From IMG/VR virus record IMGVR_UViG_3300033145_003233, positions 186,001-250,000 of that record: a stretch of 64,000 nt of DNA. One strand, written 5' to 3'. Under the pieces are notes generated by a model. The model had not been told where the DNA came from and did not search any database. It saw only the letters and a list, made by a program, of their open reading frames with translations. Every line of letters starts with the position of its first letter. Within the stretch, counting starts at the first letter, position 1. Shown piece after piece: positions 39,538 through 57,232 of the stretch. Made by a program: the position numbers and the translations under genes.

Positions 39538-39546
39538 TTACAAGAG

Positions 39547-39586
39547 AAAAAAGTGTGCAAAATAGATAATTATTCTGCACACTTTT
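39547..39586 (-). terminator. Hairpin terminator after the RNA ligase gene
   Basis: AAAAGTGTGCAGAAT / ATTTTGCACACTTTT followed by T-tract. Confidence 0.7.
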
Positions 39587-39597
39587 CAGGTCAATTC

Positions 39598-40812
39598 TTA
39601 CAAATCATCAGCAAATCTAGTAGCCGCAGATGATGGTAAATATCCTAGTAAAACATTTGCCTTTGGTCTGAAAGCAGTAAACATTTTCCTACGAGAAAGT
39701 GAACTAAAATCATCAAGTGCTGCATGAAACTTATTTTTCCTCATTAAGAAAATATATTTTATTGACTCATTAAACTTCCTTTTACCAAAAGGTTGAGGAC
39801 GTTGAGCTAGATAAAGTCCTAACTCTTTATCAGACATATGTTCAGTAAGGTCATACATATCCTCTACCTCAGAAACAAATGACTCCAACTTTTGAGAAAG
39901 AATCCAAACGATAGTATCGAAGTCTTTTTCTAGTTCCTCAGGAAGTTCCTTTTTCACTTCGTCCAAATCGTCACCATTCAATAATAAATCCCAGATAGCT
40001 AATGGAGTTACCTTTGAAATCAGTTTATGGATACGAACATACTCTGCACCTTTTACCTTTATACGAACACCGCTCTCAAAACGGATAACATATCCTTCTT
40101 CATTTTGAGTTAGAGTCTCAGCCTTTTCCACAATAGATGTCATGTCGTCAAAATCATGCTTAGGCACAAATGCTACTCTTAACTTCTTGCTTGCCTCTAC
40201 TTGAAGATCTTCATAAGAGTACTCTACACCTTGAGGATCAAAAATAGCCAACAACACTAACCCTGAGAAATTGTAATTTACAACTATTTTATTCTCTGGA
40301 TAAATTATCTCGAACAGATAAGTGTTCTTTTTCCAAGCTGACCGAAGGACAACATGATTGCTGATTATCCATTCCTCAGCCCACTTAGCTTGTTCAGATG
40401 TAAAAGAGCCACACGTAGCAACTCTCCATGCTCCCTCGTAGTAGAACATGATTCCAAGAGAACCATCCATTTTTTCAGTAACAGTGAATTCTGATTCTAT
40501 AATAGATGCAGAACCTGATTCTATTTCACCGAAATTAAAAAACTTCATGAAAGGAGAAGCAACTACCACCTTATTTTTAAGGTCCAGAATTAGACCTCTT
40601 GACATTAGAGTAAAGACATTCCAGTTTCTTCCAGCAACACAGTCAATAGAATACTTGAACAAAGCCAAATGTGGAAAATCTGGATGGTAATTAACATTGA
40701 TATTTCCTCTGTTAATTTCCTCGAACAGTCCATCAACAAGGGCTTGAAACTCCATTACTCTAGATGGATGTTTCTTTCCATGTTTTAATAATATTTCCAT
40801 TACGTCATTCAT
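39598..40812 (-). CDS. RNA ligase, T4 Rnl1-like
   Basis: SPFMKFFN, TEKMDGSLG (motif I), EGYVIRF (motif IV), KVKGAEY (motif V). Confidence 0.9.
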   Translation of the reverse strand: MNDVMEILLKHGKKHPSRVMEFQALVDGLFEEINRGNINVNYHPDFPHLALFKYSIDCVAGRNWNVFTLMSRGLILDLKNKVVVASPFMKFFNFGEIESGSASIIESEFTVTEKMDGSLGIMFYYEGAWRVATCGSFTSEQAKWAEEWIISNHVVLRSAWKKNTYLFEIIYPENKIVVNYNFSGLVLLAIFDPQGVEYSYEDLQVEASKKLRVAFVPKHDFDDMTSIVEKAETLTQNEEGYVIRFESGVRIKVKGAEYVRIHKLISKVTPLAIWDLLLNGDDLDEVKKELPEELEKDFDTIVWILSQKLESFVSEVEDMYDLTEHMSDKELGLYLAQRPQPFGKRKFNESIKYIFLMRKNKFHAALDDFSSLSRRKMFTAFRPKANVLLGYLPSSAATRFADDL

Positions 40813-40836
40813 AATAACACCTTAGAAAATACCAAT

Positions 40837-40866
40837 AAAAAAAGATGCGGTTAAAAAGCCGCATCT
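40837..40866 (-). terminator. Intrinsic terminator
   Basis: AGATGCGG-N8-CCGCATCT followed by T-tract. Confidence 0.75.
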
Positions 40867-40905
40867 CTATCCTCTACTCCAGTGGGTTATAGGTTATAGC
40901 TTTTT

Positions 40906-41235
40906 CTATCTCGGGCTTCGACAGATATAGCGACATTTCTCTTTATAAACTTTCCAGAAAGACGTTCTATCCTTCCTGTTAAATTCACCCTTAACGAGAG
41001 CACGCTTAAAAGCGATTTTCCTGCCTATTACATCATTAGGCTGATCCTTGCAATGCTGCTTAGCTGTTCCCAACCCAACTGCATCAGTCACACGTCTGTT
41101 ATTATCTGGATCTAATGCATAAATGTTACAACTTATAATCGACACTTTTTTGCCATTTTCTCCAGGCCTCGCAGAAGCACAAAGCGAACGGCAGAAAGAA
41201 ACCGCATACGTCTTATTTCCAACATTGACCTTCAT
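40906..41235 (-). CDS. Conserved phage hypothetical protein
   Basis: G.A..H.KD.....GRKIAFKRAL pattern. Confidence 0.6.
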   Translation of the reverse strand: MKVNVGNKTYAVSFCRSLCASARPGENGKKVSIISCNIYALDPDNNRRVTDAVGLGTAKQHCKDQPNDVIGRKIAFKRALVKGEFNRKDRTSFWKVYKEKCRYICRSPR

Positions 41236-41283
41236 CTTACACTCCTTAAATTATTCTACATCATTATCAATTATTAACCAATT

Positions 41284-41320
41284 ATACTATGGCTGAGAAA
41301 AAACATTTGTCTGGAAAATT
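41284..41320 (-). promoter_or_regulatory. Box promoter TTTTCCAGACA-N18-TAGTAT
   Basis: CAGACA at 41313-41308. Confidence 0.7.
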
Positions 41321-41372
41321 AATTATTCCCAAAATACTACACCAACAAATCTACATTTATACTCTAAAAATC

Positions 41373-41963
41373 CTACCCTGCTACTTTAACAATATCGGTA
41401 TTATACTTGTCAAATAGAATTAAGGCTTCTTTATAATTTTCATAATAAGCCATTTCTTGAGGAGTATGACCGTTATTGTCTCTTTGGTCTCTGTATTCTT
41501 TTACTTTGATAAATCTCTTAACCAAACGGAGATTTCTCATTGCTATAGCTTCGTGGAGAGGAGTCCTGCCATATCGAGTAGAGAGTTTTTCTTTTCTTGC
41601 TTCTACTTCTTCTGGGGTATCAGGCTCTACAATACCTTTGTCTATTAGTTCTTGCTGTTTACGTTGAAGCCTTTCTTCAACCTCTATGAGGTACTGATTT
41701 CTCTTTCTCCCTTTGATCTCCGGATGTTGCTCATAATTCTTTTGATGGTGTAACGAAAGAATCTCTTTTATTTTTACAGATGGTTCTTTACTGCTGAAAA
41801 TTATATCCGCTTCCTGCTCTAACAAACTTCCATCATCCTCGTATTCTACTTCATCAAATATCCCCGCTCCCTCCAAATCTTCCATAATTTTATTAAGGTG
41901 TTCTCTTTTTATGTCGTTCCTTAATAAGATATGTAGCATCCTATTTTTTTCCCGTACAGACAT
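41373..41963 (-). CDS. Ankyrin-repeat protein
   Basis: YGRTPLHEA...LVKRFI...RDNNGHTPQEMA. Confidence 0.8.
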   Translation of the reverse strand: MSVREKNRMLHILLRNDIKREHLNKIMEDLEGAGIFDEVEYEDDGSLLEQEADIIFSSKEPSVKIKEILSLHHQKNYEQHPEIKGRKRNQYLIEVEERLQRKQQELIDKGIVEPDTPEEVEARKEKLSTRYGRTPLHEAIAMRNLRLVKRFIKVKEYRDQRDNNGHTPQEMAYYENYKEALILFDKYNTDIVKVAG

Positions 41964-42021
41964 ACCAATTCTCCTATTAATAGGTCATTTATTAAATTCT
42001 TCAAAGAACCGTTATAACAAG

Positions 42022-42055
42022 ATAAGGGTAATGGGAATAATCCCATCACCCTTAT
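42022..42055 (-). terminator. 15-bp hairpin after the Ro60 gene (terminator or processing site)
   Basis: ATAAGGGTGATGGGA-TTAT-TCCCATTACCCTTAT, one G-U pair. Confidence 0.65.
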
Positions 42056-42068
42056 TGAAAATATTAAC

Positions 42069-43823
42069 TTACAATTTTCCCGCAGCGAACTCAGAAAGAA
42101 TACGAGGCACATTAGAATCTAGCCCTGCTATGTCCATCATTCCTGCATCACTAGGATCAGCAATAGTGAACTTATTTGCTGCAAAAGCCATAACAACAAG
42201 TTTCGCATTCTTGTTAAACTTCTTTCTGTATCTCTTCAATGCCTCAAACGGATGCGCATATCCAGTATTTGTCTCATTATCTGTTAAAACAACAAACACA
42301 TCGACATCCATTTCGTTATCCATGGCATATTGCATAGGCAAAGAACAATCCGTACTACTAAACGGAAGATTAGAAGTCCTTCTGATAACAGTATCAAGAC
42401 TATCTTTCGCTGTGATATTCAACGGAACGAAAGTACGTGAGAAACCCATCATCGCATAATTCTTTTCCGTCCTAGCAATAGTCATAGCCACAACTGATGC
42501 TGCTTCACGAGGAACTATTCCGCTTGGATGATCAAAAGAACCCCAACCACTAGAAGCCATTGAAGCACTAACATCAATTCCTAACAAGAATTTCTTTCCT
42601 GTTGGTTCAACATAGTTGAACGCCTTATAAAAAGCCTCTTCCAAAGCATCTTTAATAGCAGACACAGGACTCCATGAAGTTCTCATACCACTACCCTTGC
42701 TATAAGTCTTAAGGGCCAACATAATCGTCATTGGATGGAGACGACTCTTCTTCAATGCTTCCTCATTTGTAATCTTACCAATAGCCAATGAAGTCTCATC
42801 ACTCAATGACTTCAAAAGTCCTGAAGAAGTCATTTGACCCAAGTTACGAATTAAAGCACCTATAGGCATCTTAGGAAGCAATGCTTTTTGTACCTTTTTT
42901 TCATTCCTGAATTGAGGAGGAATAGACTCTCTTGTTAGACCATAAGCTGTAACCAACTTCACCACTTCATTAATGTCAGTTGAGTTCATACTTTGCTCAT
43001 GTGCCCAAATATACTTCAGAGTTCCATCTTTCAATGCCTCTAGTTCAGAAACTAAAAGACCAGGACTTTCTTGAGTTTTTCCAGAAGCCTCAGAATCTTT
43101 TGCTCTCTTTACAAGAACCTCTTCGCTTGTTACTCCATGTGTCGCATAATGGAAAATAGTAGCATGCTCATCAGAAGGAGTAGTCAATGCCCTACCATTT
43201 CTAGCAGGCTTTCCATCAGCAGTAGGGCGAGAGATTCTGCACATACGAAGCAGATCCCCATGAGTCAACCTTTGCCCACCAACTGAACGACCAGGGTACT
43301 TGCAAATTTGATATGCTAATTTAACAGCATCTTTTTCAGTGTACCATCTTCCCATTGCTCTAAGCATACCCTTAGCCTTATGCCCTTCTTTCAATGAAAG
43401 AACAGCAAGCACCCACTCAAAAAGAGCAGTTGAAAAACGAGCAACCTTAGGCATCATCTTATTAGCGTATGCTCTTGTCTTGTCGTCTCCGTGAACACTG
43501 CAAACTGCCAATGCAAAAATAGCAGGAGCATTCTTAACAGCACGACCTTCATCGCTAATTTGAACGATAGTATCTACCGTACGCTTACTATCTAATTTCA
43601 GACAACGCAAAATGACATCATAGTTTTCCATAGTCAGTTCGCGAGCTGAAGCATAATAAGTGCCATTCTCATTCCCTATAATTAAGAAACGATTTAGCCT
43701 CGTCCAGTCATCAGCCGTAAACACAAAACCACCTGAACGGTTTTCGACTTGCGTACTCTTAGCTCTTTTTCTTTGGTTAGTTTGAGGGTTTGCTACAATA
43801 TTAGCATAATTTTTCTCAGCCAT
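42069..43823 (-). CDS. rsr: Ro60/Rsr TROVE-domain RNA-binding protein (TROVE plus vWA)
   Basis: GGFVF..DDW.RL.RFLIIG...GTYY; LLGIDVSASM (MIDAS); TDCSLPM; FVVLTDNET; DPSDAGMMDIAGLD. Confidence 0.95.
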   Translation of the reverse strand: MAEKNYANIVANPQTNQRKRAKSTQVENRSGGFVFTADDWTRLNRFLIIGNENGTYYASARELTMENYDVILRCLKLDSKRTVDTIVQISDEGRAVKNAPAIFALAVCSVHGDDKTRAYANKMMPKVARFSTALFEWVLAVLSLKEGHKAKGMLRAMGRWYTEKDAVKLAYQICKYPGRSVGGQRLTHGDLLRMCRISRPTADGKPARNGRALTTPSDEHATIFHYATHGVTSEEVLVKRAKDSEASGKTQESPGLLVSELEALKDGTLKYIWAHEQSMNSTDINEVVKLVTAYGLTRESIPPQFRNEKKVQKALLPKMPIGALIRNLGQMTSSGLLKSLSDETSLAIGKITNEEALKKSRLHPMTIMLALKTYSKGSGMRTSWSPVSAIKDALEEAFYKAFNYVEPTGKKFLLGIDVSASMASSGWGSFDHPSGIVPREAASVVAMTIARTEKNYAMMGFSRTFVPLNITAKDSLDTVIRRTSNLPFSSTDCSLPMQYAMDNEMDVDVFVVLTDNETNTGYAHPFEALKRYRKKFNKNAKLVVMAFAANKFTIADPSDAGMMDIAGLDSNVPRILSEFAAGKL

Positions 43824-43887
43824 TTCTTTCTCCTTTTTCTTATCAACCTAATTTAATTTTAGATATATCGATATCAACACATTAGCA

Positions 43888-43915
43888 ATTATACAATTTT
43901 CTACTTTTTTGTCAA
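43888..43915 (-). promoter_or_regulatory. sigma70 promoter of the Ro60 gene, overlapped by an inverted repeat (43898-43922)
   Basis: TTGACA-16-TATAAT; TTTCTACTT-N7-AAGTAGAAA. Confidence 0.75.
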
Positions 43916-44069
43916 GTAGAAAGTTCATTTTATTTTGAAAAAACTTAAAAAATCCTCTATTTTCTTCATAATTTTTTATAACCCCCTATCAAATAAGGAG
44001 TTAAGAAATCAACTTTTTTTACACTATTTTCATATATCGGCTAAAAAACTTTAAAACTTTAATCTTTTT

Positions 44070-45719
44070 TTACTCTCTTTTTCCAAATCCGAAAGCAGAA
44101 CTAGTTTCTCCAACTCCGAATTTCTCCATAGTTTCTATGATCTCATCGGCCCATTTAATATCAATTCTTTTGACTTTTCTTCGACTACTGATATGCTTAA
44201 GATTCAAGCTATTAATAAATTCCTGAGCCTCAGCCCCTGTCCATCCATCAGTTTTAGAAACAATATGATCCAATGTCTTTTTATTTGTTTTCCATTGTTT
44301 TAATCTGTCTTTAAACATCCTTTGCCTAAGTTCTTCACAAAGAGCAGGCACTTCCACTACTCTATCAAAACGACCTGGCCTGTTCTTCAAGGCACTCTCA
44401 ATAATTCTTAATCTATTAGTCGTCCCTATGGTAACAGAATTTTTAATAGAATTCACTCCATCAAGAATATTCATCAATGCACCGAGAGAAATCACATCTC
44501 CACCCTTCTCTCTATCTTGACTAAACAAGTCTAAATCCTCTAAGATTATGATACAAGGAGACAAGAAATCTGCTAGCTTATATAAGGCCTTAATAGAAGT
44601 TATAGCTTTATAATTATTCTCTGCTAATATCTCAGGAGTAATCCATATAACAGTATAATCAGGAACTAGATTACAAATGATATTACCTATAGTGGTCTTA
44701 CCAGTCCCTGCTCTCCCGTGTAAAATTATTCCTCTTTTAGTTATTCCGCAAGCATTGTATTTTTTAACATTTTTAACAAAACCAAAAATCTCTAAATCAA
44801 AGAGATCTTTAATACTCTCTGGATAATAATAATTGTCCCATGTATATGAATCTTTGATCTCTACCTCTGAGAAAGATGCTGATATCATATTAACATCTTT
44901 TAATTTTGCTCCTCTTAGACAATTATGTTTTTTAGCAAACTCTTGCAAATCATTAATAATATTTTTTGAGCAACCCGTATCAGTACTAAAACATGTTATA
45001 GAAGCTCCTCCTCGTTCCCCATCAAAATACAAGAAAAAAGCTACATTTTCTTGTTTCTTCCCCTTCACCTTTTCAAAATATAAAAATCCCGTAGTGGTAA
45101 ATGTGGTTTCTTTACCTTTAACACTCCATGGATTCTTTTCTGGAGGAATAGAATTACCATGATCATCAAAATTCAATTCTCCTGCAAAGCTAAAACCCTC
45201 TTCCTCCATAAATTTAACCATACACTCCATTAAAATCAAAGTGATAAGAGGATGTGCTTGATAGGGATGATTTTTAATATCATTAACACTTGTAACTCCT
45301 AGAAATCTACAAAGAATTCTATAATCAATAGAACGAATAAAATCTATTTTAATCTGATCTGCAAATTTAACCGCTACTAACTCTTTATATCTTTGTTCTG
45401 CTATATCCTCTGCTATAGATTGAAGAGGACGTGGAACACCTCCACTTATAGTCGCTGTTTGAGTCTCAAACATGCGATCATCGCACGGAACAGGCATACA
45501 TTCATCACCATCATCATCAAAATTTAACTCTTCAATTACTTGTTTTACTATTTCTGTTGAAGTTGAAGCACGATGTACCGGGCTTTTTACAATAGATTGA
45601 TCTTTAATCATACGAGTATTACCTTCCATTAATATAAGTTTTTCATAATCTTCCTCCCGGATATCAAAAAATCTACACCAGAATGCTTTTAATTCTCTTT
45701 GTACCTTATTTCTTTTCAC
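44070..45719 (-). CDS. Classical-clade AAA+ ATPase with a long N-terminal domain
   Basis: GRAGTGKT (Walker A), IIILEDLD (Walker B), TTNR...ALKNRPGRFDR (SRH). Confidence 0.92.
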   Translation of the reverse strand: MKRNKVQRELKAFWCRFFDIREEDYEKLILMEGNTRMIKDQSIVKSPVHRASTSTEIVKQVIEELNFDDDGDECMPVPCDDRMFETQTATISGGVPRPLQSIAEDIAEQRYKELVAVKFADQIKIDFIRSIDYRILCRFLGVTSVNDIKNHPYQAHPLITLILMECMVKFMEEEGFSFAGELNFDDHGNSIPPEKNPWSVKGKETTFTTTGFLYFEKVKGKKQENVAFFLYFDGERGGASITCFSTDTGCSKNIINDLQEFAKKHNCLRGAKLKDVNMISASFSEVEIKDSYTWDNYYYPESIKDLFDLEIFGFVKNVKKYNACGITKRGIILHGRAGTGKTTIGNIICNLVPDYTVIWITPEILAENNYKAITSIKALYKLADFLSPCIIILEDLDLFSQDREKGGDVISLGALMNILDGVNSIKNSVTIGTTNRLRIIESALKNRPGRFDRVVEVPALCEELRQRMFKDRLKQWKTNKKTLDHIVSKTDGWTGAEAQEFINSLNLKHISSRRKVKRIDIKWADEIIETMEKFGVGETSSAFGFGKRE

Positions 45720-45737
45720 TTTTCAACTATAAAAATT

Positions 45738-46724
45738 TTAATAATCACTAGTAGCGGTTAAGTGAAAAGCTCCTTCACAATCTTTCCTTCTTAACCACAA
45801 GTAAGTATCTACATCACACATACTACAACCTGCTAATTCAGCTATTTCCTTACAAACCATAATAGAAGTCGCTCTTATCTCACATTCTTCCAATGACCCG
45901 CGAGGAATCAATTCGTTATTAGATATTTTTGCTTGGAGAAGAGGAGAGTAATAGAGACAACCCAAGTGGGATAGCATTTTCGGTATTTGGTAATCAGCGG
46001 GGACAGGGACTTTTTCTATTTCATCTTTAAACCATTGAACTCTTCTATATAGCATCATAACTAATAGAAATATCCTTTTAAGAAACATATCTTCTCCATA
46101 ACCAGGATAGGTTGTAATAATAAGTTGGATAAATTTTTCTACGCCTATTTTCCCCGACTTTATTTTATCCACTACTGTTTCCGAAGTTTCTTCTATTCTC
46201 CAAGAATGTCTAAGAGATTTATAACCATAGCAACCCATTCCCGCTGCTATTTCTCGAAGATGTCTAATTCTATCAGTTAAATTGGGGAATCTATACAAAG
46301 TCAACTTGCTTACAAAATTACCAATTACATCTTGGCAAAGATTAGGAAGACGATCATGCCCAAATATTTCGGATCTTTCTTCTGCAAAAGCTTGATCCAG
46401 CAATTCATACATCAATGTTGCCCCAGCATTATTGGGCCTACAATCATGAACACCATACCAATATTGATAGTTAATAGAGCCAGCTATCAACTCATAAAGA
46501 AACAACTCTTGATCTAAGCGATTCTCCTTGGGGGGAGTTTCTCTATCAGAAGAAATAAGACACTTTGGATATCCAAGCCAAAAATCCTTACCGTCCTTTA
46601 ATCCTTCTTTAATTAAAGCTGCTGTTTCTGTTATCCCTTTACAAGTCATCCAAACATGAGAAGGATTCTTTGTAAATTTCTCAGAAAGTTCCATTACTCC
46701 ACTAATTAATTTATTCTTCATCAC
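45738..46724 (-). CDS. Queuosine salvage protein (DUF2419 / QNG1-like Q-5'-phosphate N-glycosylase)
   Basis: PADYQIPKML..LG.L.YS..L...I....GS.EECEIRA.SI; D..LW; FHLT.T..Y C-terminus. Confidence 0.85.
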   Translation of the reverse strand: MMKNKLISGVMELSEKFTKNPSHVWMTCKGITETAALIKEGLKDGKDFWLGYPKCLISSDRETPPKENRLDQELFLYELIAGSINYQYWYGVHDCRPNNAGATLMYELLDQAFAEERSEIFGHDRLPNLCQDVIGNFVSKLTLYRFPNLTDRIRHLREIAAGMGCYGYKSLRHSWRIEETSETVVDKIKSGKIGVEKFIQLIITTYPGYGEDMFLKRIFLLVMMLYRRVQWFKDEIEKVPVPADYQIPKMLSHLGCLYYSPLLQAKISNNELIPRGSLEECEIRATSIMVCKEIAELAGCSMCDVDTYLWLRRKDCEGAFHLTATSDY

Positions 46725-47079
46725 CTTTCTCCTTAATTTTTATTCCGCATTCTTTACATTGATCCCATAAAAGGCTCATCCCAAAAGCCATTTCAGGAGA
46801 GGGAATTAATTCCACCACTTCTTGTTTCCCTGTTTTTTGATTTATTTTTACCCTTGCAATAATAACAGAATCATCACTATTACTATCGAAATCTCCCCAC
46901 CCAAGATAACTACAATACCCATCTGCTTGTTTAGGCCAGTCTTCTCTTACGCTCCAATAAGGACAAGGACGATATTCTTCATCATTAGGTGCTCTACTCC
47001 CAAAATAACAATATTGCCCAGACGGTATCTTAGGATAAGCTTTAAGAAACTTTATAAATTTACGTAGTTGTTTTAGCAG
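46711..47079 (-). CDS. Unlisted 122-aa Cys-rich phage protein (CTG start)
   Basis: Manual translation: LKQLRKF...IPSGQYCY...CPYWS...GYCSYL...LLWDQCKECGI; AAGGAAG upstream; fills the intergenic gap. Confidence 0.7.
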   Translation of the reverse strand: MLKQLRKFIKFLKAYPKIPSGQYCYFGSRAPNDEEYRPCPYWSVREDWPKQADGYCSYLGWGDFDSNSDDSVIIARVKINQKTGKQEVVELIPSPEMAFGMSLLWDQCKECGIKIKEKGDEE

Positions 47080-47957
47080 TCTCTTCTTCCTTTATTTGTT
47101 TCATGGCCATCTTAAGACCTATAAGATGGGAATTACATCTTATATCTATTTTCTCTCCTACGCTACCGGCCCACTCATAATAATAATTTCCAAGAATCTT
47201 ATTACCATGCTGTCTACACCAAACCAACCATTCTTCCTTATGGCATACGGCATATTCACCACTCTCATCTTGAAATTCTTCCCATTTCTTATCAGCATAA
47301 TCTTCTATACATCTACAAGTATCTGTTTCGGGTGGGCACGTACACTTAAAACAATCATCTGCACTAGCAGCTTCTGAAAGATGTTCTTTCACATATTGAA
47401 GAGCTTCATCCGGATCCCACATCGTATAACCTCTACCATGTTCAGAAGCTTCGCACTTCGAAGCGAAATAATCAAGACTGAATTTACTAGAAATCGATCT
47501 TAAAGAAATCTCTCCTGACCACCTATAAACTGCCGAACCCAAATCTCCTGTAACAAAAAGGGTATTATATATTCGGGCATAAGCTACTTTATATACTCCT
47601 GTTCCAGGTTTGGCCCAGACTAACATTTCCATAGAAGGCCCATTATCCGAATAGGAAAAATATTGTGCCTCATGATCTTTAAACCACCCCTCAATTTGTT
47701 TGTTCTCTTCTTCTCTTTTCATTTTTCTTCCTTTCTGCTGTTTTTCTACTATTGATTTTCTACCCATATGTATCTACTAAAGCATTCAAAGAAGGAAGGC
47801 AGGTTGGGCAAATATCCCAATAACTACCATTCGGTACTTTCATATATTTCCAAGAATTATCTTTGGCAAATTTTCTTACTTCTCTAATGCTTTCTCCTGC
47901 CTCCTTATACTCTCTAGTGCAGTTAGTACAATATAAATAGTAAAGAGCATGCACCAT
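47060..47957 (-). CDS. Two hypothetical ORFs (47060-47767, 47760-47957)
   Basis: ORF track; LFVTGDLG..VY.W in the first. Confidence 0.65.
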
Positions 47958-47958
47958 T

Positions 47959-48255
47959 TTAAGCTATAATCTCTTTAGTAGGAGTAACTATCCCACTTCC
48001 AAATTTACTACTATACTCGTTGATCATCTCGGCTGTTGGTTTAACCTTAGCCATGATAAAATTATTTTTAATAGATACTTTCTTATCATTAGAATAAGGA
48101 AGCCATACCATAAGAGCCATGCCTATGCCATGTTCTTCTGCGGGGAACAAAACAATCTTGGCAGGATTTTCAACGATGATATCATCTTTTGACCCGTACT
48201 CTATCTCTCCAATAATATCTTCTCCACTTGTTAATTTTAAAATTTTAATACTCAT
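47959..48255 (-). CDS. Phage Sm-like domain protein
   Basis: IKILKLTSGEDII.E...ENP...W.PYS....I....P...M.NEY...FGSGIV, typical of the T4-like phage Sm-like family. Confidence 0.65.
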   Translation of the reverse strand: MSIKILKLTSGEDIIGEIEYGSKDDIIVENPAKIVLFPAEEHGIGMALMVWLPYSNDKKVSIKNNFIMAKVKPTAEMINEYSSKFGSGIVTPTKEIIA

Positions 48256-48307
48256 TAGTACCCTTTCTATTTATTTCCAAATACAATATTTTCCTGTTGT
48301 GAGCATC

Positions 48308-49252
48308 TTACAAAAGATAATAAGCCGAAGATTTTAGATCTTCTATCTTATTCCCACCAATGTAGGAAATAGCACTTTGCAAATCCTCTTTTAATTCTCC
48401 CATTAACCTCTCCATATTCCCCCTAAATTTAATCAAAATTTTCTTTCCCTCTATATTGTTGTATTCTTGTTTGTTATATTTAGAAGCACTACCATAATAT
48501 TCCTTGTACATATTATCTTCTATTTCAATTATATTCCCAGCGGATTGCTCATATCCTGCGAATAAAGATCCAGCCATAACCATATCTGCACCGCAAGCAA
48601 GGGCTTTTGCTATATCCCCATGTTCAACCACCCCTCCATCAGCTATAATAATAACTTTCTCTCTAGCCCTTACACAATCTAATATTGTACTGACCATTGG
48701 ACGATGCACACCTGTTTTATTCTTTGTAATACAAACGCTTCCTCCAGCAATCCCGCATTTAATAGCATCTACACCCCACCCCTCAATCTCTTTCACAGCA
48801 TCTCCTGTAGCCACATTACCAATAATTAAGAAAGTTTCCGGAAAGTTGTCTTTAATAAAAGTTGTCATCTGTCTAGCTTCATCTGACCACGCATTGGCAA
48901 CATCTATAGTAATATAATCAGGTATTTGGTTGTCTTTTAATAGCCCTTCTAATTGATTTTTAGATCCCCAACTAATACCTACACTTACAGAAGTTAAATA
49001 TTCATGCTGTTTCATAGTAGTTATAAAAAATCCATAATTTACATCGAAACGATGCATTGTATAAAACCAGTTGTGTTTAGCAAAAAATTGACAAGTTTTC
49101 ATATCTACAACGCTCTTCATATTAGCAGGATATATAGGCATATTAAAAATATGCTTACCAAGTTGAACAGAAGTATCTATATGACCACGACTACTCACGA
49201 TGCATTTCTTGGGTATTAATGATATATCAGAATAACTTAATTGTTTTTCCAT
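48308..49252 (-). CDS. guaC: GMP reductase
   Basis: PANM, ITIDVAN, GNVAT, KCGIAGGSVCIT, IADGG...GDIAKA, YYGSAS, EGKK. Confidence 0.92.
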   Translation of the reverse strand: MEKQLSYSDISLIPKKCIVSSRGHIDTSVQLGKHIFNMPIYPANMKSVVDMKTCQFFAKHNWFYTMHRFDVNYGFFITTMKQHEYLTSVSVGISWGSKNQLEGLLKDNQIPDYITIDVANAWSDEARQMTTFIKDNFPETFLIIGNVATGDAVKEIEGWGVDAIKCGIAGGSVCITKNKTGVHRPMVSTILDCVRAREKVIIIADGGVVEHGDIAKALACGADMVMAGSLFAGYEQSAGNIIEIEDNMYKEYYGSASKYNKQEYNNIEGKKILIKFRGNMERLMGELKEDLQSAISYIGGNKIEDLKSSAYYLL

Positions 49253-49920
49253 GCTATTTTCTTACAAAGTTTAATAAAATATTCTTGTTCGAATTTCTGC
49301 TTCATATAATTAACATCCTTATGGACCCATTGAACATTACCATTTATATACCCCCTTGTATTATCTATCCTATCTAAAGAAGCCGTTGCCCGATGGCGAT
49401 TCGTGAGGGCGAGTTCTATCGATAAACCGGATAAAGCACATTTTTTATTCTGGCTTACAAATAAATTCCAGGCATATTTTATAGAGATTTTAAATTTATG
49501 AGATCTTTTAATAGCCCCCCGTTTTATCCCTCCCCACCACTTACCTGTTATCTCCTTATATCCTTTCCAATTTTTATAATTATTTCTATTAACTCTAATC
49601 CAACATCCACAGGATTTGGTATTACCGCTTTTTAATTCATGTGTAGAAAGAATTGTTTCATTGCCACAGGCACACTGGCACTCCCACATTCTTTGACCCT
49701 TATACTTGCCCTTAATTCCATCAAATCTTTTTATAACTATAAGCCTAGTAAAAGTCTGGCCTGCTAATGAATAATTTCTTTTAATTTTATATTTTTCTAA
49801 GTAATTTCTAACCGTACTTTTATGACATCCAATTTCTTTAGCGATCGAATTCATTGTTCTGTTATTTTTGATATATTCCCGTTTTAAATAAGATTGACTA
49901 ATATCATATTTAATCCCCAT
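49237..49920 (-). mobile_element. Free-standing HNH-type homing endonuclease
   Basis: GQTFTRL.V...WECQCACG...L.SG.TKSCGC; CALSG...SLDRIDN..GY..GNVQWV...N.MK. Confidence 0.75.
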
Positions 49921-49993
49921 TTTGATCTCCCCATATAAACAATTCGTATATATATAGTTCTATCAAACCTGCTTTAATCCTTTTTCTACATTC

Positions 49994-50218
49994 TTACGCC
50001 TTCACATCAATATGAGTGATTTCTTCCTTCTTCTCTATCTTCTCTATTAATTTTAATTCATGGATACTCTTCACAAGAAAATATTCCACCTCTCTCAAAG
50101 ATTGTCTTACAGTTGCCATATCTTCATGTCCCTCTAAAGCCTTTCTAATGGCTGTTGTGCTCTCTTTTTTATTCCCCAACTGTTGTAGTAAACTGTACTT
50201 TTGATTATCAGTTATCAT
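49994..50218 (-). CDS. Hypothetical protein
   Basis: ORF track. Confidence 0.55.
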   Translation of the reverse strand: MITDNQKYSLLQQLGNKKESTTAIRKALEGHEDMATVRQSLREVEYFLVKSIHELKLIEKIEKKEEITHIDVKA

Positions 50219-51075
50219 TCATACACTTCCCCGGTCCACACCATATACTCCCTTTCATCGACAGGGAGCTTAAAACTATAAAATAATTCTTTTAAACATT
50301 TTTCACATATATCAAAGAGATAGGCAGTACAATCAGAAAGAATGGGAGAATGATAAAAGCCTTTTGCCTGAGCACCTATAAGACCATAAAAACTTTCTGG
50401 TCCCTCATGCTCTATTGCCATAGAACATGATTCTCCGCACATATTGCACAAACATGTTTTATGTATTTCATGTGGTATTTTCTCCGCTATCTCATCGTCC
50501 CATTTAGACACTTTAGTTTTTAAAGTTGCTATATATGGCAAATCTCTTAATTCTCCATCTAGGTCTAAACCACCCCCAACTAAGAAATCTTTAGTTGTAA
50601 CCTTATGACCTACAAATAGTGGCTGCATCTTATAAGCATGCTCTATCTCCCTCTCTAGCATCACACAATATTCTATAGTTAATGGAGATAACTGTTCAAC
50701 AATGCCATGAAGTATATATAAGGTTTTACCCGTATCATAAATATCATCGATAATTAGAACATGCTTACCTGCAATTGTCTTTTTTATATAATCTGACAAT
50801 TCTACATCAACCACTCCAGTAGATTTTGTTCCTTCATAACTACTAGCTTTAACATGGTGAGTACTAGAATTAGCATGAAACTTTGGTGGTAATTTAATTT
50901 CTACATCTCTTGCGAAACGGATAGCTCCTTCTCTTATCACAAGAATCACCACTTGATCTCCCCCACCCTTCACATTTGGATAATGAGCAACTATTTCATT
51001 TGCAATAGTGGATGAGATTCTTGTTAGGTCATTACTATGAAGTATAACATCTTTAATAACATTTAGTCTTTGCAT
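50215..51075 (-). CDS. hpt: Hypoxanthine-guanine phosphoribosyltransferase fused to a C-terminal Cys-rich domain
   Basis: SSYEG..STG.V; VLIIDDIYDTGKTL (PRPP loop); FLVGGGLD....RDLPYI; then CNMCG...FDICEKC. Confidence 0.85.
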   Translation of the reverse strand: MQRLNVIKDVILHSNDLTRISSTIANEIVAHYPNVKGGGDQVVILVIREGAIRFARDVEIKLPPKFHANSSTHHVKASSYEGTKSTGVVDVELSDYIKKTIAGKHVLIIDDIYDTGKTLYILHGIVEQLSPLTIEYCVMLEREIEHAYKMQPLFVGHKVTTKDFLVGGGLDLDGELRDLPYIATLKTKVSKWDDEIAEKIPHEIHKTCLCNMCGESCSMAIEHEGPESFYGLIGAQAKGFYHSPILSDCTAYLFDICEKCLKELFYSFKLPVDEREYMVWTGEVYE

Positions 51076-51076
51076 T

Positions 51077-52820
51077 TTACCCCCAATAAGTATAAATCAT
51101 AGGTCTTAGTTCTTGGATTGTCTTATAAAAATCTTTAAAAATATCTAGCCAATAAATATGTAATACAATTGAACCGGCAATTACAGGACGATAATATGTT
51201 TTATAATAATCCAATTTATCTCCTGATAATAAGGGTGGAGTCTTTTCTGTCCATATTCCTATTGCCATGTTATACTCCCCTCCATTCATGTAATCAGGAT
51301 ACCCTTCTTTTCCATATTTTGGACTACCTGGAATATGAATTATTCCCTGATAAGGCCATATACCACATCTATGAGTCAAATCCTTAACGCTATCCTGAGA
51401 TTCATCGCATTCATAATAGTCCATGATATCATCATACCTACCCCAGTCCTGATGAGTTAAATGACGAAACATCATAACATTGGACATCCCATATTCTCCA
51501 CGAACAACAGGTCTTATAAATTTGGACTTATCTATTTTCCCATCTTCTATCTTTCCAAAAATAAAAGTCATGTCCAATGAGCTAGAAGATCTACCTTCTT
51601 CTCTCCCATCAACCTTATCAACTATATTTTTACATTCTTCTTTATTATTTTGAACCCAGTTTATAAAACCTTCAAAGTCTCCCTCCTTCTTGTAAAAAAT
51701 ACTTGGCTTAAATGCTTCCACATTTAACCTATGGTCAATAGGAATATCCTTCTCATCACACTTAATATCTGTTAATCCCCATCCTATTACTTTATGAATT
51801 CTTGTTCCCACTTAACTACTCCTTACTTTCTTTTTGGGGTTCAGGATGATCTCTCATCTCTTCAAAAGCCCACCTTATTTGATGAAAGGCAGATTCTACC
51901 CATGGATAAAGACCTATATAAGAATCACCGCGACCAAATTCTTCCCACTTAGCTATAAATCCCCCGTCCCTACTATCTTGATATGTTGTTTTAAAATTAG
52001 TTTTTTTATACCACCTCAAATCTGGTCTGTGTGGGCCGTATTTTTGCCCCGGCAAATTATCACTGAAATTTTCGACTAACCATCGTGCATGCAAAATTGC
52101 CATTCTCTTCCCTCTCTTTTTAAACTCCCTTTCTTCTTGTTTGTCCCATTTGTCTTCTGGCTTTAGGTATCTATCCCAATATCGATAAATATACCAGTTA
52201 GGAGGAGTTTTTTCTAACCCCGGAGTTACATAGAATTTCTTTACCACTATATAGTTAAGACTTTGTGATTCCAGAGCAAAGACATGAAGATTCTGTACTA
52301 ACTCAGGGTAATTTTTGCAAACTACCTTTTTGGAGGGAAGATAAAAGATATGATTATCCATATCATTATATTCATATTGATTATTCTCGGTATATTTATA
52401 TTCTACCAATTTTTGATAAATAAAATCCATGTCCTCAAAATTCTCTTCAAATTCCTCTGCCACAAAGTTTTCACAAACCCACTCTAAATAAAGTTGCCCT
52501 ATCCATCTATCTTTCTCTCCAAAATCAAAGTACTTAAGAGCTTTTGCTATGATCTTAGGAGCACTTATGCTACTCCCACCACTCTCCTCTTGTGCTTCTG
52601 GATAATATCTTTTGCACCATCTTAAAAGAGCTTTCGTGGCTTTTGCTTCATGTATCCTTTCTCTCTCCAAATAATCCATTCCCATTATCTTTTCTATTTC
52701 TGTTTTTTGCTTTTTAGTTAGCTTTTTCTTTTTAGGGACTTTCTTTTTCCCTTTCCTCCATGCCACCATCTTATTCTTTGCTTTCTTTACTTTCTTTTTT
52801 TTCTTTGTCATATTATTCAC
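51077..52820 (-). CDS. Two hypothetical proteins (51077-51811, 51816-52820)
   Basis: Long ORFs that fit the gene packing. Confidence 0.7.
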
Positions 52821-54128
52821 CTAATTATCTAATGATTTTCTAAAAATATTACTCCATGCCTTCCGAGACAAATAATCATAAAATCCTGACAAGGGAAGCC
52901 TTACCAGAATAAATAGAAAATATCTCAGTATGGGAAATTCAACAACCAACATAGCTAAAGCATACAATCTACCTATTAATTTGTAATCAGAGGTATAGGG
53001 ATAATTGATTTTAAACCTATTAAAAGTAGAACTTAATATAGAAGATTTAACATTGTCATCAAAAAATGCCGCTCCTGGGTATGGCTGAAAAACAGTAAAT
53101 TTACCAACATCAGGTTTTAATTTAAGAATCATATCAATAGTTTCTAGTGATTCTTTGTACGTCTCAGAAGGAGATCCGAACATAGCATATGTATGAAACT
53201 TAATCCCACACTTTTTAACTAACTCTATTTTCTTATAAATAAAATCATTCGTTAAGTTCTTACCTAATATCGAATTACGTATATGCTCATTACCACTTTC
53301 TACACCTATCCCTATTTGATAACATCCAGTTTCTACTAATTTTGCTAACAACTCCTCCGTGATAATTTCAAATCTAAGATGACACCAATATGGCAAATCT
53401 ACTTCTTCTGAATATCTATCCAAGAATTCTGAAGTCCACTTTTTGTTGGCCCCAAATGTTTCATCAAAAAATTCTATCCTTTTAGCATTCCCTTTGTAGG
53501 TATTTATTTCTTCAAAAATATCATCCATGTCCCTGAGTCTATAATATTTATTATTAAAAAGACTGTTTATTCCCTTGTTTGTACAAAAATTACAATTGTA
53601 GGGACATCCTCTAGCACAAGATATATATAAAGAATCTTCTAAAACAGTTTTATAATTATTATAAATTCTTCTGGAAGGGATTGGTATCTCATTACTTGGC
53701 AATAATTCTCCCAACTCATTCCTTTGCCCTTTTGTCCATAAAGATGGAATATTAAATGTGGATATATTTTCATCAATATTATTTAATAAAGTTAAAAGGG
53801 GTTTCTCTCCTTCTCCCATACAAATCATATCAATATTCTCATCAAAAACAATGTCAGGGTACGATGTGGGATGAGGCCCACCTACAACAGTCACAATCTT
53901 ATTATTTATACCTTTAACTTTTTTAACCATGTCCAAAAGCCAGCAATGATTAAGTGTAAGAGAATAAATCCCTATTACATGAGGATCAAAAGACTGAATC
54001 TTATAAGGCAACTTCCCATGACCGTCCATAAAAACATCACATTCATGTTTATCTTCGATATAAGAAGTCAATGTCATAATACTCAACCATCTTATACTAT
54101 CATTCTGAAGGAATAGAATCCTTGCCAT
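52821..54128 (-). CDS. Cobalamin-binding (class B) radical SAM protein
   Basis: VVGGPHPT, GEGE, RGCPYNCNFC, GVESG, YAMFGSPSET. Confidence 0.92.
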   Translation of the reverse strand: MARILFLQNDSIRWLSIMTLTSYIEDKHECDVFMDGHGKLPYKIQSFDPHVIGIYSLTLNHCWLLDMVKKVKGINNKIVTVVGGPHPTSYPDIVFDENIDMICMGEGEKPLLTLLNNIDENISTFNIPSLWTKGQRNELGELLPSNEIPIPSRRIYNNYKTVLEDSLYISCARGCPYNCNFCTNKGINSLFNNKYYRLRDMDDIFEEINTYKGNAKRIEFFDETFGANKKWTSEFLDRYSEEVDLPYWCHLRFEIITEELLAKLVETGCYQIGIGVESGNEHIRNSILGKNLTNDFIYKKIELVKKCGIKFHTYAMFGSPSETYKESLETIDMILKLKPDVGKFTVFQPYPGAAFFDDNVKSSILSSTFNRFKINYPYTSDYKLIGRLYALAMLVVEFPILRYFLFILVRLPLSGFYDYLSRKAWSNIFRKSLDN

Positions 54129-55332: not shown

Positions 55333-56448
55333 TTATTCGTCAGAGAAGTCTACTACTTCCCCCTTCGCCTCTTTTTTATTCTTCATAAGAAGATAATCTT
55401 CATTAAGCATTTTTAGAATAGCCCTACCGCAAGACCATTCTTCTCTTTCTTTTAGAGAGCAAATAACTATACCTTCTCTAATATGGTCAGCACCATTTCT
55501 TTTAGCGAGAAAAGAAGGGCCTGTAGAAAGGCCTTTCATCAAATTCATATTAAATGACCCCTCGATAATAAGAGGAACCATAGGGACAGAAAAAGCCTTA
55601 CATAGATTATTAAATAGTTCCCAATCAACATACTTACCATCTATCTTCAATGAAAATGCCACAAAGTTAAGAGAATTAGGTTTTCCATAATGCATAGATT
55701 TATGTCCACCTCTTACTCTTCCATACACTTCTCCGTATAGAGTAGCACTTTTCTTGCAGCCATAACGAGGATCATTACCTAAAGCCGAAAGAAGATATTT
55801 AACTGACTCAAGAGTAAAGGGATACCAGTAGCTATTAGAAAGCATTTCTTCATCTGTAGGCATTTTTCTCTTAACCCTATGAGAACCACCTTTCCACTCT
55901 AGTTCTCCTTCCTCAGATTTGAAGAAGCCTATCCTACAATTAGTCCCATCTATTTTTTCTGTAACACAAACTTCCTCTCCCTTTTCAAAAATATCAGGGA
56001 AATTTCTGATATTCTCTATGTCTGTATATTTAGTAAACAGAGGGTCATCGGGAGCAGCATCTCCAGCCATAGCTCTTAGAGGTGGTTCGTATTTAGTAAT
56101 TCCATAATGTTCAGCTACATCTGTCCCTACTTCCCAATTTTCTTCGTTATTTATAATCAGTCCGTAAGACATCGCCCCACGAAGTCTGGCACACCTAACG
56201 CGATTGTGAAGTTTACCTCCGAGATAGTTACCCACTCCAAGTCTCTCTACAAGTTCGAGAGGAAGCACAGCATCAACAGGGATATAAACAACAATATCTC
56301 CTACTTTATAATCTCCCTTGCCAACTATGCACTCCCATCCCTTGACAACGGCAATTTCTAGCCTGTCAGCATTCTCGTGCGAGAGAACTTCTTTTATATC
56401 ACAAACTTCTACTATTAAACTACTGCTCATCCTTCTTCCTTTCTTCAT
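55333..56448 (-). CDS. RNA ligase, DRB0094 family
   Basis: N-terminal H.NADRLE...GW...V.KG; TEKIDGTN, REGIVI, KMLNEDYL. Confidence 0.9.
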   Translation of the reverse strand: MKKGRRMSSSLIVEVCDIKEVLSHENADRLEIAVVKGWECIVGKGDYKVGDIVVYIPVDAVLPLELVERLGVGNYLGGKLHNRVRCARLRGAMSYGLIINNEENWEVGTDVAEHYGITKYEPPLRAMAGDAAPDDPLFTKYTDIENIRNFPDIFEKGEEVCVTEKIDGTNCRIGFFKSEEGELEWKGGSHRVKRKMPTDEEMLSNSYWYPFTLESVKYLLSALGNDPRYGCKKSATLYGEVYGRVRGGHKSMHYGKPNSLNFVAFSLKIDGKYVDWELFNNLCKAFSVPMVPLIIEGSFNMNLMKGLSTGPSFLAKRNGADHIREGIVICSLKEREEWSCGRAILKMLNEDYLLMKNKKEAKGEVVDFSDE

Positions 56449-57193: not shown

Positions 57194-57195
57194 AT

Positions 57196-57232
57196 ATTCT
57201 ATTTCTACTATTTTCTACTTGTCTGGAAAATT
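57196..57232 (-). promoter_or_regulatory. Box promoter TTTTCCAGACA-N18-TAGAAT, embedded in the MTase 3' end
   Basis: CAGACA at 57225-57220; the box encodes ...INFPDK*. Confidence 0.7.

What the first reader, a model, noticed from the sequence alone, without database searches (positions are those of the whole stretch)
45738..51075. Phage queuosine-salvage hydrolase clustered with GMP reductase and HPRT
Seen: a DUF2419/QNG1-like gene next to the AAA+/Ro60 block, followed by guaC and hpt. Known: QNG1 releases queuine from Q-5'-monophosphate produced by tRNA turnover, and GuaC and HPRT recycle purines. Inference: the phage recovers 7-deazaguanine bases from degraded host tRNA, either for tRNA re-modification or for DNA modification. 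No tgt, dpdA, folE or queCDE is present in this window.
Basis: partly seen in the sequence, partly recalled or inferred. Interest (0 to 1): 0.6.

Follow-up and report, generated by a model that had tools for sequence, protein, structure and literature searches.

The report
Phage Qng1-like glycosidase beside purine salvage
A 548-kb phage carries a divergent, phage-only relative of the queuosine-salvage enzyme Qng1 next to a GMP reductase and a hypoxanthine-guanine phosphoribosyltransferase; its core catalytic and base-binding residues are kept, but the residues that make Qng1 specific for queuosine are not, so it probably cleaves some other guanine-like nucleotide.

Summary
45738-46724(-) matches PF10343 (E 8e-19) and folds like Qng1 (TM 0.71). 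48308-49252(-) is a GMP reductase above NCBI's equivalog cut-off. 50215-51075(-) is an HPRT-like enzyme.

The protein belongs to a clade seen almost only on phage contigs: about 200 metagenomic proteins, 38 IMG/VR loci, none in 50,697 GenBank phages and no PHROG.

This clade keeps the nucleophile Asp, the ribose Lys, the base-recognising Asp, the stacking Trp and the C-terminal Tyr. It has lost D69 and D207 of the catalytic H-bond network, three residues of the cyclopentenediol pocket (W48, W94, W299), and phosphate ligands R80 and K233. It has gained an invariant Asp of its own.

The complete genome has no tgt, dpdA, folE or queCDE. DNA modification is therefore unsupported here, and tRNA re-modification would depend on host enzymes.

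Across phages the gene sits in guanine-nucleotide neighbourhoods. It lies next to GMP reductase in three separate clades, inside preQ0/DpdA clusters in at least two, and beside ribonucleotide reductase in another. Linkage to AAA+/Ro60/RNA ligase is confined to the megaphage clade.

Best reading: an N-glycosidase for guanine-like, probably 7-deazaguanine, nucleotides, whose substrate is not established as queuosine monophosphate.

The parts
45738..46724 (-). Qng1/DUF2419-like N-glycosidase of a phage-only clade (328 aa from the GTG; probable start is the ATG at 46721, giving 327 aa)
   Evidence: PF10343 E 8e-19. A profile of 111 relatives matches StQng1 7uk3 at E 1.7e-25 over residues 10-308. 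AlphaFold2 pLDDT 90, Foldseek TM 0.71 to 7u07/7u91. Key residues tabulated.
46711..47091 (-). Unlisted small Cys-rich reading frame (126 codons stop to stop) with no ATG/GTG/TTG near its 5' end; its stop overlaps the Qng1-like start
   Evidence: Open frame. It is homologous to a 142-aa gene in the same position, also overlapping the Qng1-like start, in the 461-kb relative L011.
47060..47767 (-). 235-aa protein of unknown function
   Evidence: phrog_5051, E 5.8e-22, unknown function; no Pfam match.
47959..48255 (-). 98-aa protein, conserved upstream of the Qng1-like gene in the megaphage clade
   Evidence: Weak DUF6561 match and phrog_527. Cluster c25 is present in six clade-A loci.
48308..49252 (-). 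GMP reductase (GuaC, Firmicutes type)
   Evidence: NF003966, 396 bits against cut-off 344. 1ypf E 9e-85, catalytic Cys conserved.
49237..49920 (-). HNH homing-type endonuclease inserted between hpt and guaC
   Evidence: phrog_3322 and phrog_374 HNH endonuclease, E about 1e-20.
50215..51075 (-). HPRT-like 6-oxopurine phosphoribosyltransferase with a roughly 100-aa Cys-rich C-terminal extension
   Evidence: PF00156. TIGR01203 93 bits, below its cut-off of 150. 1hgx E 1.6e-17 with catalytic motifs aligned. 30% identical to a 196-aa homologue at the same position in L005. No match in GenBank phages.
44070..45719 (-). AAA+ ATPase (CDC48/PAN-like ATPase domain, unknown N-terminal half); starts 18 nt after the Qng1-like stop
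   Evidence: PF00004 E 1.8e-16. Cluster c7 lies downstream of the Qng1-like gene in 8 loci.
42069..43823 (-). Ro60/Rsr orthologue (TROVE plus vWA)
   Evidence: PF25045 E 1.6e-60 and PF05731 E 3.7e-26.
43888..43915 (-). Perfect sigma-70-type promoter (TTGACA, 16 nt, TATAAT) upstream of Ro60, in a stretch conserved among relatives
   Evidence: 12 of 12 match. About 77% nucleotide identity to the same gap in L001, L005 and L006.
39598..40812 (-). T4 Rnl1-type RNA ligase, the downstream end of the conserved Qng1-like/AAA+/Ro60/ligase block
   Evidence: PF09511 E 1.1e-18. Syntenic in L001, L005, L006, L010, L011 and L012.

Best explanation
The gene encodes an active N-ribohydrolase of the Qng1 (DUF2419, helix-hairpin-helix glycosylase-like) fold. 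It releases a guanine-like base, most probably a 7-deazaguanine derivative, from a ribonucleotide or ribonucleoside. It belongs to a phage-specific clade whose substrate pocket has been rebuilt, so its substrate is probably not restricted to queuosine-5'-monophosphate and may not be that compound at all.

In this megaphage it sits in a guanine-nucleotide salvage block. HPRT turns free guanine or hypoxanthine into GMP or IMP. GMP reductase turns GMP into IMP, which moves guanine nucleotides towards adenine nucleotides for a 35% G+C genome. The Qng1-like enzyme removes or recycles the guanine-like nucleotides that those enzymes cannot handle, such as those arising from tRNA breakdown.

Shown: family and fold; retention of the nucleophile, ribose, base-edge and C-terminal residues; loss of the Q-specific residues; the gene contexts. 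Inferred: the chemistry, the substrate class and the physiological role.
For: - **Fold and family:**
- **Conserved across 111 relatives:** N72, F75(Y), W76, K199, R200, I203(L), D231, Y232, E267, R271, D298, W302(W/F), H316 and the C-terminal Tyr. In StQng1 these bind the ribose, stack the base, read the guanine-type edge and attack C1'.
- **Rebuilt pocket:** D69, D207, W48, W94, W299, R80 and K233 are replaced, and there is a new invariant Asp at D212.
- **Guanine-nucleotide contexts across the family:**
  - GMP reductase lies within 4 kb in three separate clades of the tree. Only 59 of 50,697 GenBank phage records carry one.
  - The gene is embedded among QueC, QueD and QueE with DpdA on the same record (G010). 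In another group it lies near FolE and QueE, with QueD, QueC and DpdA on the same 179-kb contig. DpdA occurs in only 233 of 50,697 GenBank phage records.
  - It lies next to the ribonucleotide reductase large subunit in about ten loci.
- **Literature hint:** a bacterial qng1 neighbour was found to transport preQ0/preQ1 rather than Q (PMC11130926).
Against: - No enzyme assay exists for any member of this clade.
- Canonical Qng1 does not cleave GMP, and the pocket changes could merely loosen rather than change specificity.
- The residue mapping rests on profile alignment to the crystal sequences, not on a superposition of coordinates.
- Gene neighbourhood is weak evidence in phages, where nucleotide-metabolism genes cluster anyway.
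- Many of the compared viral records are fragments.
- Queuosine is scarce in cells, so a nutritional role is quantitatively small.
Confidence: 0.5

Rival explanations
1. Canonical Qng1 function. The enzyme hydrolyses queuosine-5'-monophosphate from degraded host tRNA to queuine, which is then re-inserted into tRNA, including the phage's own tRNA-His, Asp and Asn.
For: PF10343 membership and Qng1 as the best structural match. The nucleophile Asp, K199, D298, W302 and the C-terminal Tyr are kept. The phage encodes three of the four GUN tRNAs. Replacing Trp with Thr, Gly or Ser at W299 enlarges the pocket rather than blocking it.
Against: D69 and D207 are described as part of a strictly conserved network, and alanine changes at these residues compromised complementation. 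Both are lost here, as are W48, W94, W299, R80 and K233. No TGT is present in this genome or in 38 related viral records. Most bacterial TGTs use preQ1, not queuine. No queuine lyase or Q-precursor transporter was found.
Confidence: 0.2
2. It is not a 7-deazaguanine enzyme at all. It would be a nucleosidase for ordinary or damaged guanine nucleotides (GMP, guanosine, 8-oxo-GMP), serving the purine economy or pool cleaning alongside HPRT, GuaC and ribonucleotide reductase.
For: The recurrent GuaC, HPRT and RNR neighbourhoods. Loss of the 7-substituent pocket and of the substrate-assisted proton relay, with a new invariant Asp (D212) that could act on N7 of a true purine. The next-best folds are 8-oxoguanine glycosylases. 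A sister fold family, URC4/DUF1688, appears as a structural neighbour.
Against: GMP hydrolysis followed by HPRT would be a futile cycle inside one gene block. Canonical Qng1 rejects GMP. The gene's position inside preQ0/DpdA clusters in other phages points to deazaguanines.
Confidence: 0.15
3. It is a component of the RNA repair and quality-control block. It would act on RNA ends or tRNA fragments together with the AAA+ ATPase, Ro60 and the Rnl1-type ligase, for example on a 3'-terminal wobble queuosine left by an anticodon nuclease.
For: The AAA+ start lies 18 nt after the Qng1-like stop. The order Qng1-like, AAA+, Ro60, ankyrin-like protein, Rnl1 is conserved in 7-8 loci at only 41-49% protein identity. 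RtcB, Thg1 and a second RNA ligase lie nearby in relatives.
Against: The linkage is confined to one clade of the family tree, and TROVE is present in only 4 of 38 records. The invariant C-terminal Tyr, whose carboxylate caps the ribose 3'-OH in StQng1, argues for a mononucleotide or a terminal residue, not internal RNA. No Y RNA or other Rfam family was found in the block.
Confidence: 0.08

Closest known systems
Qng1/QNG1 (DUF2419, PF10343): Sphaerobacter thermophilus StQng1 (PDB 7uk3, 7u91) and human QNG1 (7ugk)
   Same: Same fold (TM 0.71 and 0.67) and similar length. The HhH Lys/Asp pair, the Y232 ribose wall, base-edge Asp D298, stacking W302, E267/H316 and the C-terminal Tyr are the same.
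   Different: About 20% identity. D69 and D207 of the proton relay are lost. Cyclopentenediol-pocket residues W48, W94 and W299 are lost, and phosphate ligands R80 and K233 are replaced. There is a clade-specific invariant D212. The clade is found on phage contigs with no TGT partner.
QueK (IU-nucleoside hydrolase family queuosine hydrolase of Clostridioides difficile)
   Same: It also liberates queuine from a queuosine precursor for salvage. One relative, L002, carries an IU_nuc_hydro gene directly upstream of its Qng1-like gene.
   Different: It has an unrelated fold, and no IU_nuc_hydro gene exists in this genome.
Phage 7-deazaguanine DNA modification clusters (FolE-QueD-QueE-QueC plus DpdA, e.g. 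coliphage 9g)
   Same: Members of the same Qng1-like clade sit inside or beside such clusters in other phages.
   Different: This megaphage has none of those genes. The Qng1-like protein is a hydrolase-type HhH fold, not a TGT-fold transglycosylase.
GMP reductases of jumbo phages (Bacillus phage G gp120, Xanthomonas phage XacN1, Caulobacter phage Cr30)
   Same: guaC as a phage auxiliary purine gene; 42% identity to phage G gp120.
   Different: Pairing with an HPRT-like gene, which has no match in GenBank phages, and with a Qng1-like gene.

Membership tests
Qng1/DUF2419 (PF10343) | Significant match to the family HMM above the gathering score | tested here: met
   68.7 bits against a cut-off of 25, E 8e-19. 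A single copy in the genome.
Qng1/DUF2419 (PF10343) | Two-lobed HhH glycosylase-like fold of StQng1/HsQNG1 | tested here: met
   AF2 model pLDDT 90.4. Foldseek TM 0.71 to 7u07/7u91 and 0.67 to 7ugk, with probability 1.00.
Qng1/DUF2419 (PF10343) | HhH-motif nucleophile Asp (D231) and ribose-orienting Lys (K199) | tested here: met
   D244 in 111 of 111 and K216 in 110 of 111 relatives.
Qng1/DUF2419 (PF10343) | Base recognition by D298 and stacking by W302/I203; C-terminal Tyr carboxylate with E267/H316 | tested here: met
   D306 111/111; W310 as W or F in 108/111; L220 110/111; E280 110/111; H321 111/111; terminal Y328 111/111.
Qng1/DUF2419 (PF10343) | Strictly conserved H-bond network D69-N72-D207 proposed for leaving-group protonation | tested here: not met
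   N85 is kept (111/111). D69 is G82 here, and N/G/D/S across the clade. D207 is M224 here, and M/Q in 96 of 111. Both are Asp in the St and human enzymes.
Qng1/DUF2419 (PF10343) | Aromatic specificity pocket for the cyclopentenediol of queuosine (P46, W48, H53, Y93, W94, W299) | tested here: not met
   P53 and Y106 are kept. W48 is C/F/W, W94 is variable (E107 here) and W299 is T/G/S. H53 falls in a gapped region.
Qng1/DUF2419 (PF10343) | 5'-phosphate pocket (R80, K233, Q306) | tested here: inconclusive
   R80 is D94, K233 is Q246 and Q306 is K314. Other basic residues nearby are conserved: R/K at position 92, R96 and R313. The phosphate may therefore be bound differently.
Qng1/DUF2419 (PF10343) | Hydrolysis of Q-5'MP to queuine | not testable with these tools
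   Needs an enzyme assay.
GMP reductase (GuaC) | Equivalog HMM above cut-off, and catalytic Cys loop | tested here: met
   NF003966, 396 bits against 344. Full-length alignment to 1ypf with GSVCITK matching GKVCITK.
Hypoxanthine-guanine phosphoribosyltransferase | Equivalog HMM above cut-off | tested here: not met
   TIGR01203, 93 bits against a cut-off of 150.
Hypoxanthine-guanine phosphoribosyltransferase | PRPP-binding acidic motif with DTG Asp, flexible-loop SSY..TKSTG, and purine-site GxGxD motif | tested here: met
   The alignment to 1hgx shows all three.
Phage 7-deazaguanine DNA modification system | DpdA transglycosylase plus preQ0 synthesis genes in the genome | tested here: not met
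   No hit in the complete 548-kb record with a DpdA profile, with tblastn of the 9g genes, or with the FolE, PTPS and QueC HMMs.

The most novel reading that the evidence does not exclude
The phage clade is a functionally new branch of the Qng1 fold. It would be a nucleotide-level enzyme of viral 7-deazaguanine metabolism whose substrate is not queuosine but a precursor or DNA-type derivative, such as preQ0-, preQ1-, ADG- or G+-ribonucleotides. In phages that carry DpdA it would feed that enzyme. In phages that lack DpdA, like this one, it would keep such analogues out of the nucleotide pool ahead of ribonucleotide reductase and the polymerase. Because Qng1 is proposed to work with retention through an Asp-ribosyl intermediate, base exchange rather than simple hydrolysis is also not excluded.
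Probability: 0.3. Interest if true: 0.7.

Novelty: new variant of a known kind. Interest (0 to 1): 0.55.

Why it matters
Qng1 is known as a salvage enzyme of eukaryotes and a few bacteria, with one substrate class: Q and Q-5'MP. This work finds a sizeable clade seen almost only on viral contigs. It keeps the chemistry but has lost the queuosine-specific residues. It recurs next to GMP reductase, ribonucleotide reductase and preQ0/DpdA genes.

That points to an undescribed step in how large phages handle guanine-like nucleotides, linking tRNA turnover, purine salvage and deazaguanine DNA modification. It is directly testable with one recombinant protein and a small panel of nucleotides. It could also yield a new reagent for releasing or detecting deazaguanine bases.

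The searchable literature links no Qng1 homologue to phages.

Tried and rejected
- **Qng1-like as a substitute for DpdA.** I considered this for phages that have preQ0 genes but no PF01702 hit. It fell because PF01702 does not detect even the phage 9g DpdA. A DpdA profile built from six phages then found DpdA on the same records as the Qng1-like gene in G010 and G039:C1.
- **The weak QueC hit in the genome** (24 bits) is a NadE NAD synthase (219 bits).
- **Y RNA or another known RNA beside Ro60.** None was found at gathering scores over the whole window, or at E up to 1 over 39000-47200. There are no tRNAs in the window.
- **Similarity to deposited phages.** There is none for the region at DNA level, for the Qng1-like protein or for the HPRT-like protein.
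- **The B12-binding radical SAM gene (52821-54128) as a possible queuine lyase.** It is not conserved beside the Qng1-like gene in any relative. No QueL reference sequence was available, so this was left untested. PMC6754566 is not held.
- **The 654-aa and 1093-aa protein next to the gene in group E.** It has no PDB or informative Pfam match apart from its intein.
- **The conserved 240-270-aa neighbour (cluster c1).** In this window it is 56420-57193, next to the DNA methylase. It has no Pfam match, and its linkage looks inherited rather than functional.
- **Steps not taken.** No alternative genetic code was needed or used. No reads tool was used. The large representative-protein search was not run.

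Full report
**1. What is there**

The window is bases 186001-250000 of a single 547,943-bp viral record that CheckV rates 100% complete. It has about 35% G+C and a uniformly negative GC skew, and in the stretch examined (about 39.6-60.5 kb) every sizeable reading frame lies on the minus strand. Everything reads open under table 11, and no other code was needed.

On the minus strand the order of transcription is as follows.

| Coordinates | Product |
|---|---|
| 52821-54128 | B12-binding radical SAM protein |
| 51816-52820 and 51077-51811 | Two unknowns |
| 50215-51075 | HPRT-like |
| 49994-50218 | 74-aa unknown |
| 49237-49920 | HNH endonuclease |
| 48308-49252 | GMP reductase |
| 47959-48255 | 98-aa protein |
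| 47760-47957 | 65-aa protein |
| 47060-47767 | 235-aa protein (phrog_5051) |
| 45738-46724 | Qng1-like |
| 44070-45719 | AAA+ ATPase |
| 42069-43823 | Ro60 |
| 41373-41963 | Ankyrin-like protein |
| 39598-40812 | Rnl1-type RNA ligase |

The three genes named in the finding are real and lie at the stated coordinates.

- GuaC passes NCBI's equivalog cut-off (396 against 344 bits). It aligns end to end with the Bacillus anthracis GMP reductase 1ypf, catalytic cysteine loop included.
- The HPRT-like protein is more divergent (93 bits against a cut-off of 150). It still carries the PRPP motif, the flexible-loop motif and the purine-site motif of HGXPRT 1hgx. It also has a Cys-rich tail of about 100 residues that its only close relative lacks.

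**2. The Qng1-like protein**

- It matches PF10343 at E 8e-19.
- A profile of 111 relatives matches the Sphaerobacter thermophilus Qng1 crystal sequence at E 1.7e-25 over residues 10-308, and human QNG1 at 2e-18.
- An AlphaFold2 model (pLDDT 90.4) has Qng1 structures as its top ten Foldseek hits (TM 0.67-0.71). 8-oxoguanine DNA glycosylases follow far behind.

I mapped the residues that Hung et al. (PMC9881137) describe for StQng1 onto the phage protein and counted them in the 111 relatives.

*Kept, mostly invariant*

| StQng1 residue | Phage residue |
|---|---|
| N72 | N85 |
| F75 | Y88 |
| W76 | W89 |
| K199 | K216 |
| R200 | R217 |
| I203 | L220 |
| D231 (nucleophile) | D244 |
| Y232 | Y245 |
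| E267 | E280 |
| R271 | R284 |
| D298 (base edge) | D306 |
| W302 | W310 (W or F in the clade) |
| H316 | H321 |
| Y323 (C-terminal Tyr) | Y328 |

*Not kept*

| StQng1 residue | Phage residue | In the clade |
|---|---|---|
| D69 | G82 | N/G/D/S |
| D207 | M224 | M or Q in 96 of 111 |
| W48 | C55 | C/F/W |
| W94 | E107 | variable |
| W299 | T307 | T/G/S |
| R80 | D94 | mostly D/N |
| K233 | Q246 | Q in 105 of 111 |
| Q306 | K314 | K/N/H |

D69, D207 and a basic residue at position 233 are present in both the bacterial and the human enzyme. The clade also has its own invariant residues, notably D212, four residues before the HhH lysine.

The parts that hold the ribose, stack the base, read a guanine-type edge and attack C1' are therefore intact. 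The parts that fit the cyclopentenediol of queuosine, and the proposed relay that protonates the leaving group through the Q side-chain amine, are not.

The nucleophile and the base-edge Asp are present, and two relay Asp are absent.

**3. The family is viral**

- The word search found 197 relatives, all carrying PF10343 and almost all unnamed metagenomic proteins, many on contigs of 60-350 kb.
- IMG/VR holds 38 loci.
- A pattern scan of one genome for each of 185,579 prokaryotic species found only four contigs, all from MAGs. One is a 179-kb phage-like contig.
- None of 50,697 GenBank phage records has a match, and no PHROG matches.
- In the ESM Atlas, Uroviricota is the commonest phylum label in the nearest cluster.
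- I found no paper linking Qng1/DUF2419 to phages. A large survey of jumbo-phage RNA-repair and deazaguanine systems returned no passage on Qng1 or queuosine salvage under my search terms, and I did not query DUF2419 itself there.

**4. Neighbourhoods**

I called and clustered the genes of 43 loci and built a tree of the Qng1-like proteins.

- **Clade A.** This holds the window and 6-7 relatives at 41-49% identity, on contigs of 297-461 kb. The order is Qng1-like, AAA+, Ro60, ankyrin-like, Rnl1 ligase. guaC and an HPRT-like gene lie upstream only in the window and in the 351-kb relative.
- **Clade B.** The order is DnaB, an unknown, Qng1-like, SNF2 helicase, DNA methylase, FolE. QueE and Thg1 follow further along. 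On the 179-kb contig there are also QueD, a QueC-like gene and DpdA.
- **Clade E.** The gene lies between QueC/QueD and QueE, and DpdA is on the same record.
- **Locus L039.** It has QueC within 8 kb.
- **Clade C.** About ten loci have HNH, DUF5661, Qng1-like, ribonucleotide reductase large subunit, RecA.
- **GuaC.** It lies within 4 kb in clade A, in clade F and in L043. These are three separate places on the tree.

For scale, GuaC occurs in 59 and DpdA in 233 of 50,697 GenBank phage records. The common denominator is guanine-nucleotide metabolism. Ro60 linkage is confined to one clade, with TROVE in 4 of 38 records.

**5. What the genome lacks**

The whole record has no TGT, QueD, FolE or QPTR transporter, and no IU-nucleoside hydrolase. 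The weak QueC hit is NadE.

PF01702 fails to detect even the phage 9g DpdA. I therefore built a DpdA profile from six phages. It finds nothing in this genome or in the other complete relative (461 kb), while it does find DpdA in two records of clades B and E.

The genome does encode 29 tRNAs, including His-GTG, Asp-GTC and Asn-GTT, 2-14 kb upstream of the window. Their Q34 modification would depend on host TGT, which in most bacteria takes preQ1 rather than queuine.

**6. Interpretation**

The most economical reading is an active Qng1-fold N-glycosidase for a guanine-like, probably 7-deazaguanine, ribonucleotide or nucleoside whose 7-substituent is not queuosine's. It sits in a purine-salvage block in which HPRT and GuaC process ordinary guanine towards IMP. 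I put this at about 0.5.

| Reading | Probability | Main obstacle |
|---|---|---|
| Canonical Q-5'MP salvage | about 0.2 | Fails two residue tests and has no downstream enzyme in the phage |
| Ordinary or damaged guanine nucleotide nucleosidase | about 0.15 | Would be a futile cycle with HPRT |
| Role on RNA ends with AAA+/Ro60/ligase | about 0.08 | Linkage is specific to one clade |

None of these can be settled without an assay.

**7. Limits**

- Residue mapping is by profile alignment, not by superposing coordinates.
- Most compared viral records are fragments, so absences outside the two complete genomes are weak.
- The genome-wide scan for cellular homologues was pattern-based.
- The host is unknown.

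Noticed in passing
window 46711-47091 (-): A 126-codon open frame with no ATG/GTG/TTG near its 5' end encodes a Cys-rich protein. It is homologous to a 142-aa gene at the same place in the 461-kb relative (L011:9613-10041). In both, its end overlaps the Qng1-like start. Either it starts at a non-canonical codon, or it is reached by a frameshift from the 235-aa gene whose last 30 nt it overlaps.
   Followed up: partly
window 43888-43915 (-), within the 43824-44069 gap: A perfect TTGACA-16-TATAAT promoter lies upstream of Ro60, in a stretch about 77% identical to the same gap in three relatives. A hairpin followed by T-rich sequence (terminator-like by eye) lies after Ro60 at about 41964-42068. 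Ro60 therefore looks like its own transcription unit. No Y RNA was detected with Rfam.
   Followed up: partly
G000:C1:171686-183550 and 65493-69218 (outside the window): There are 29 tRNA genes, 27 of them in a 12-kb array ending 2.5 kb before the window. They include His-GTG, Asp-GTC and Asn-GTT but no Tyr.
   Followed up: no
window 39598-40812, 55333-56448, 56420-58234; loci L002, L006, L008, L009: A large RNA-repair island is shared with relatives. It includes an Rnl1-type ligase, a PHA02142-type RNA ligase, an N6/N4 DNA methylase with a conserved 257-aa unknown partner, and in relatives RtcB split by a LAGLIDADG element, Thg1, a Metallophos protein and an ADP-ribosylglycohydrolase.
   Followed up: partly
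window 52821-54128 (-) and 10467-11483 (-): Two radical SAM genes: a B12-binding type (PhpK- or HpnJ-like at low scores) 1.7 kb upstream of hpt, and a SPASM-domain type. Neither is conserved beside the Qng1-like gene in relatives, and their substrates are unknown.
   Followed up: no
window 49237-49920 (-); L005:6132-6893; L022:12086-13324; L016:5150-8431; L020: Mobile elements pepper these nucleotide-metabolism blocks. There is an HNH endonuclease between hpt and guaC here, IS605-type TnpB genes next to the Qng1-like gene in two relatives, an intein with HNH in a neighbouring 1093-aa protein, and a guaC split into two pieces in G013.
   Followed up: no
L050:3007-3960 (phage 9g DpdA): Pfam PF01702 (TGT) gives no hit at E 0.001 or better to the phage 9g DpdA. 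Screens for phage DpdA that rely on that model alone will therefore miss it.
   Followed up: yes
G000:C1:52476-53252 (L004:1423-2199): The megaphage encodes a full-length NAD synthase (NadE, PF02540, 219 bits).
   Followed up: no
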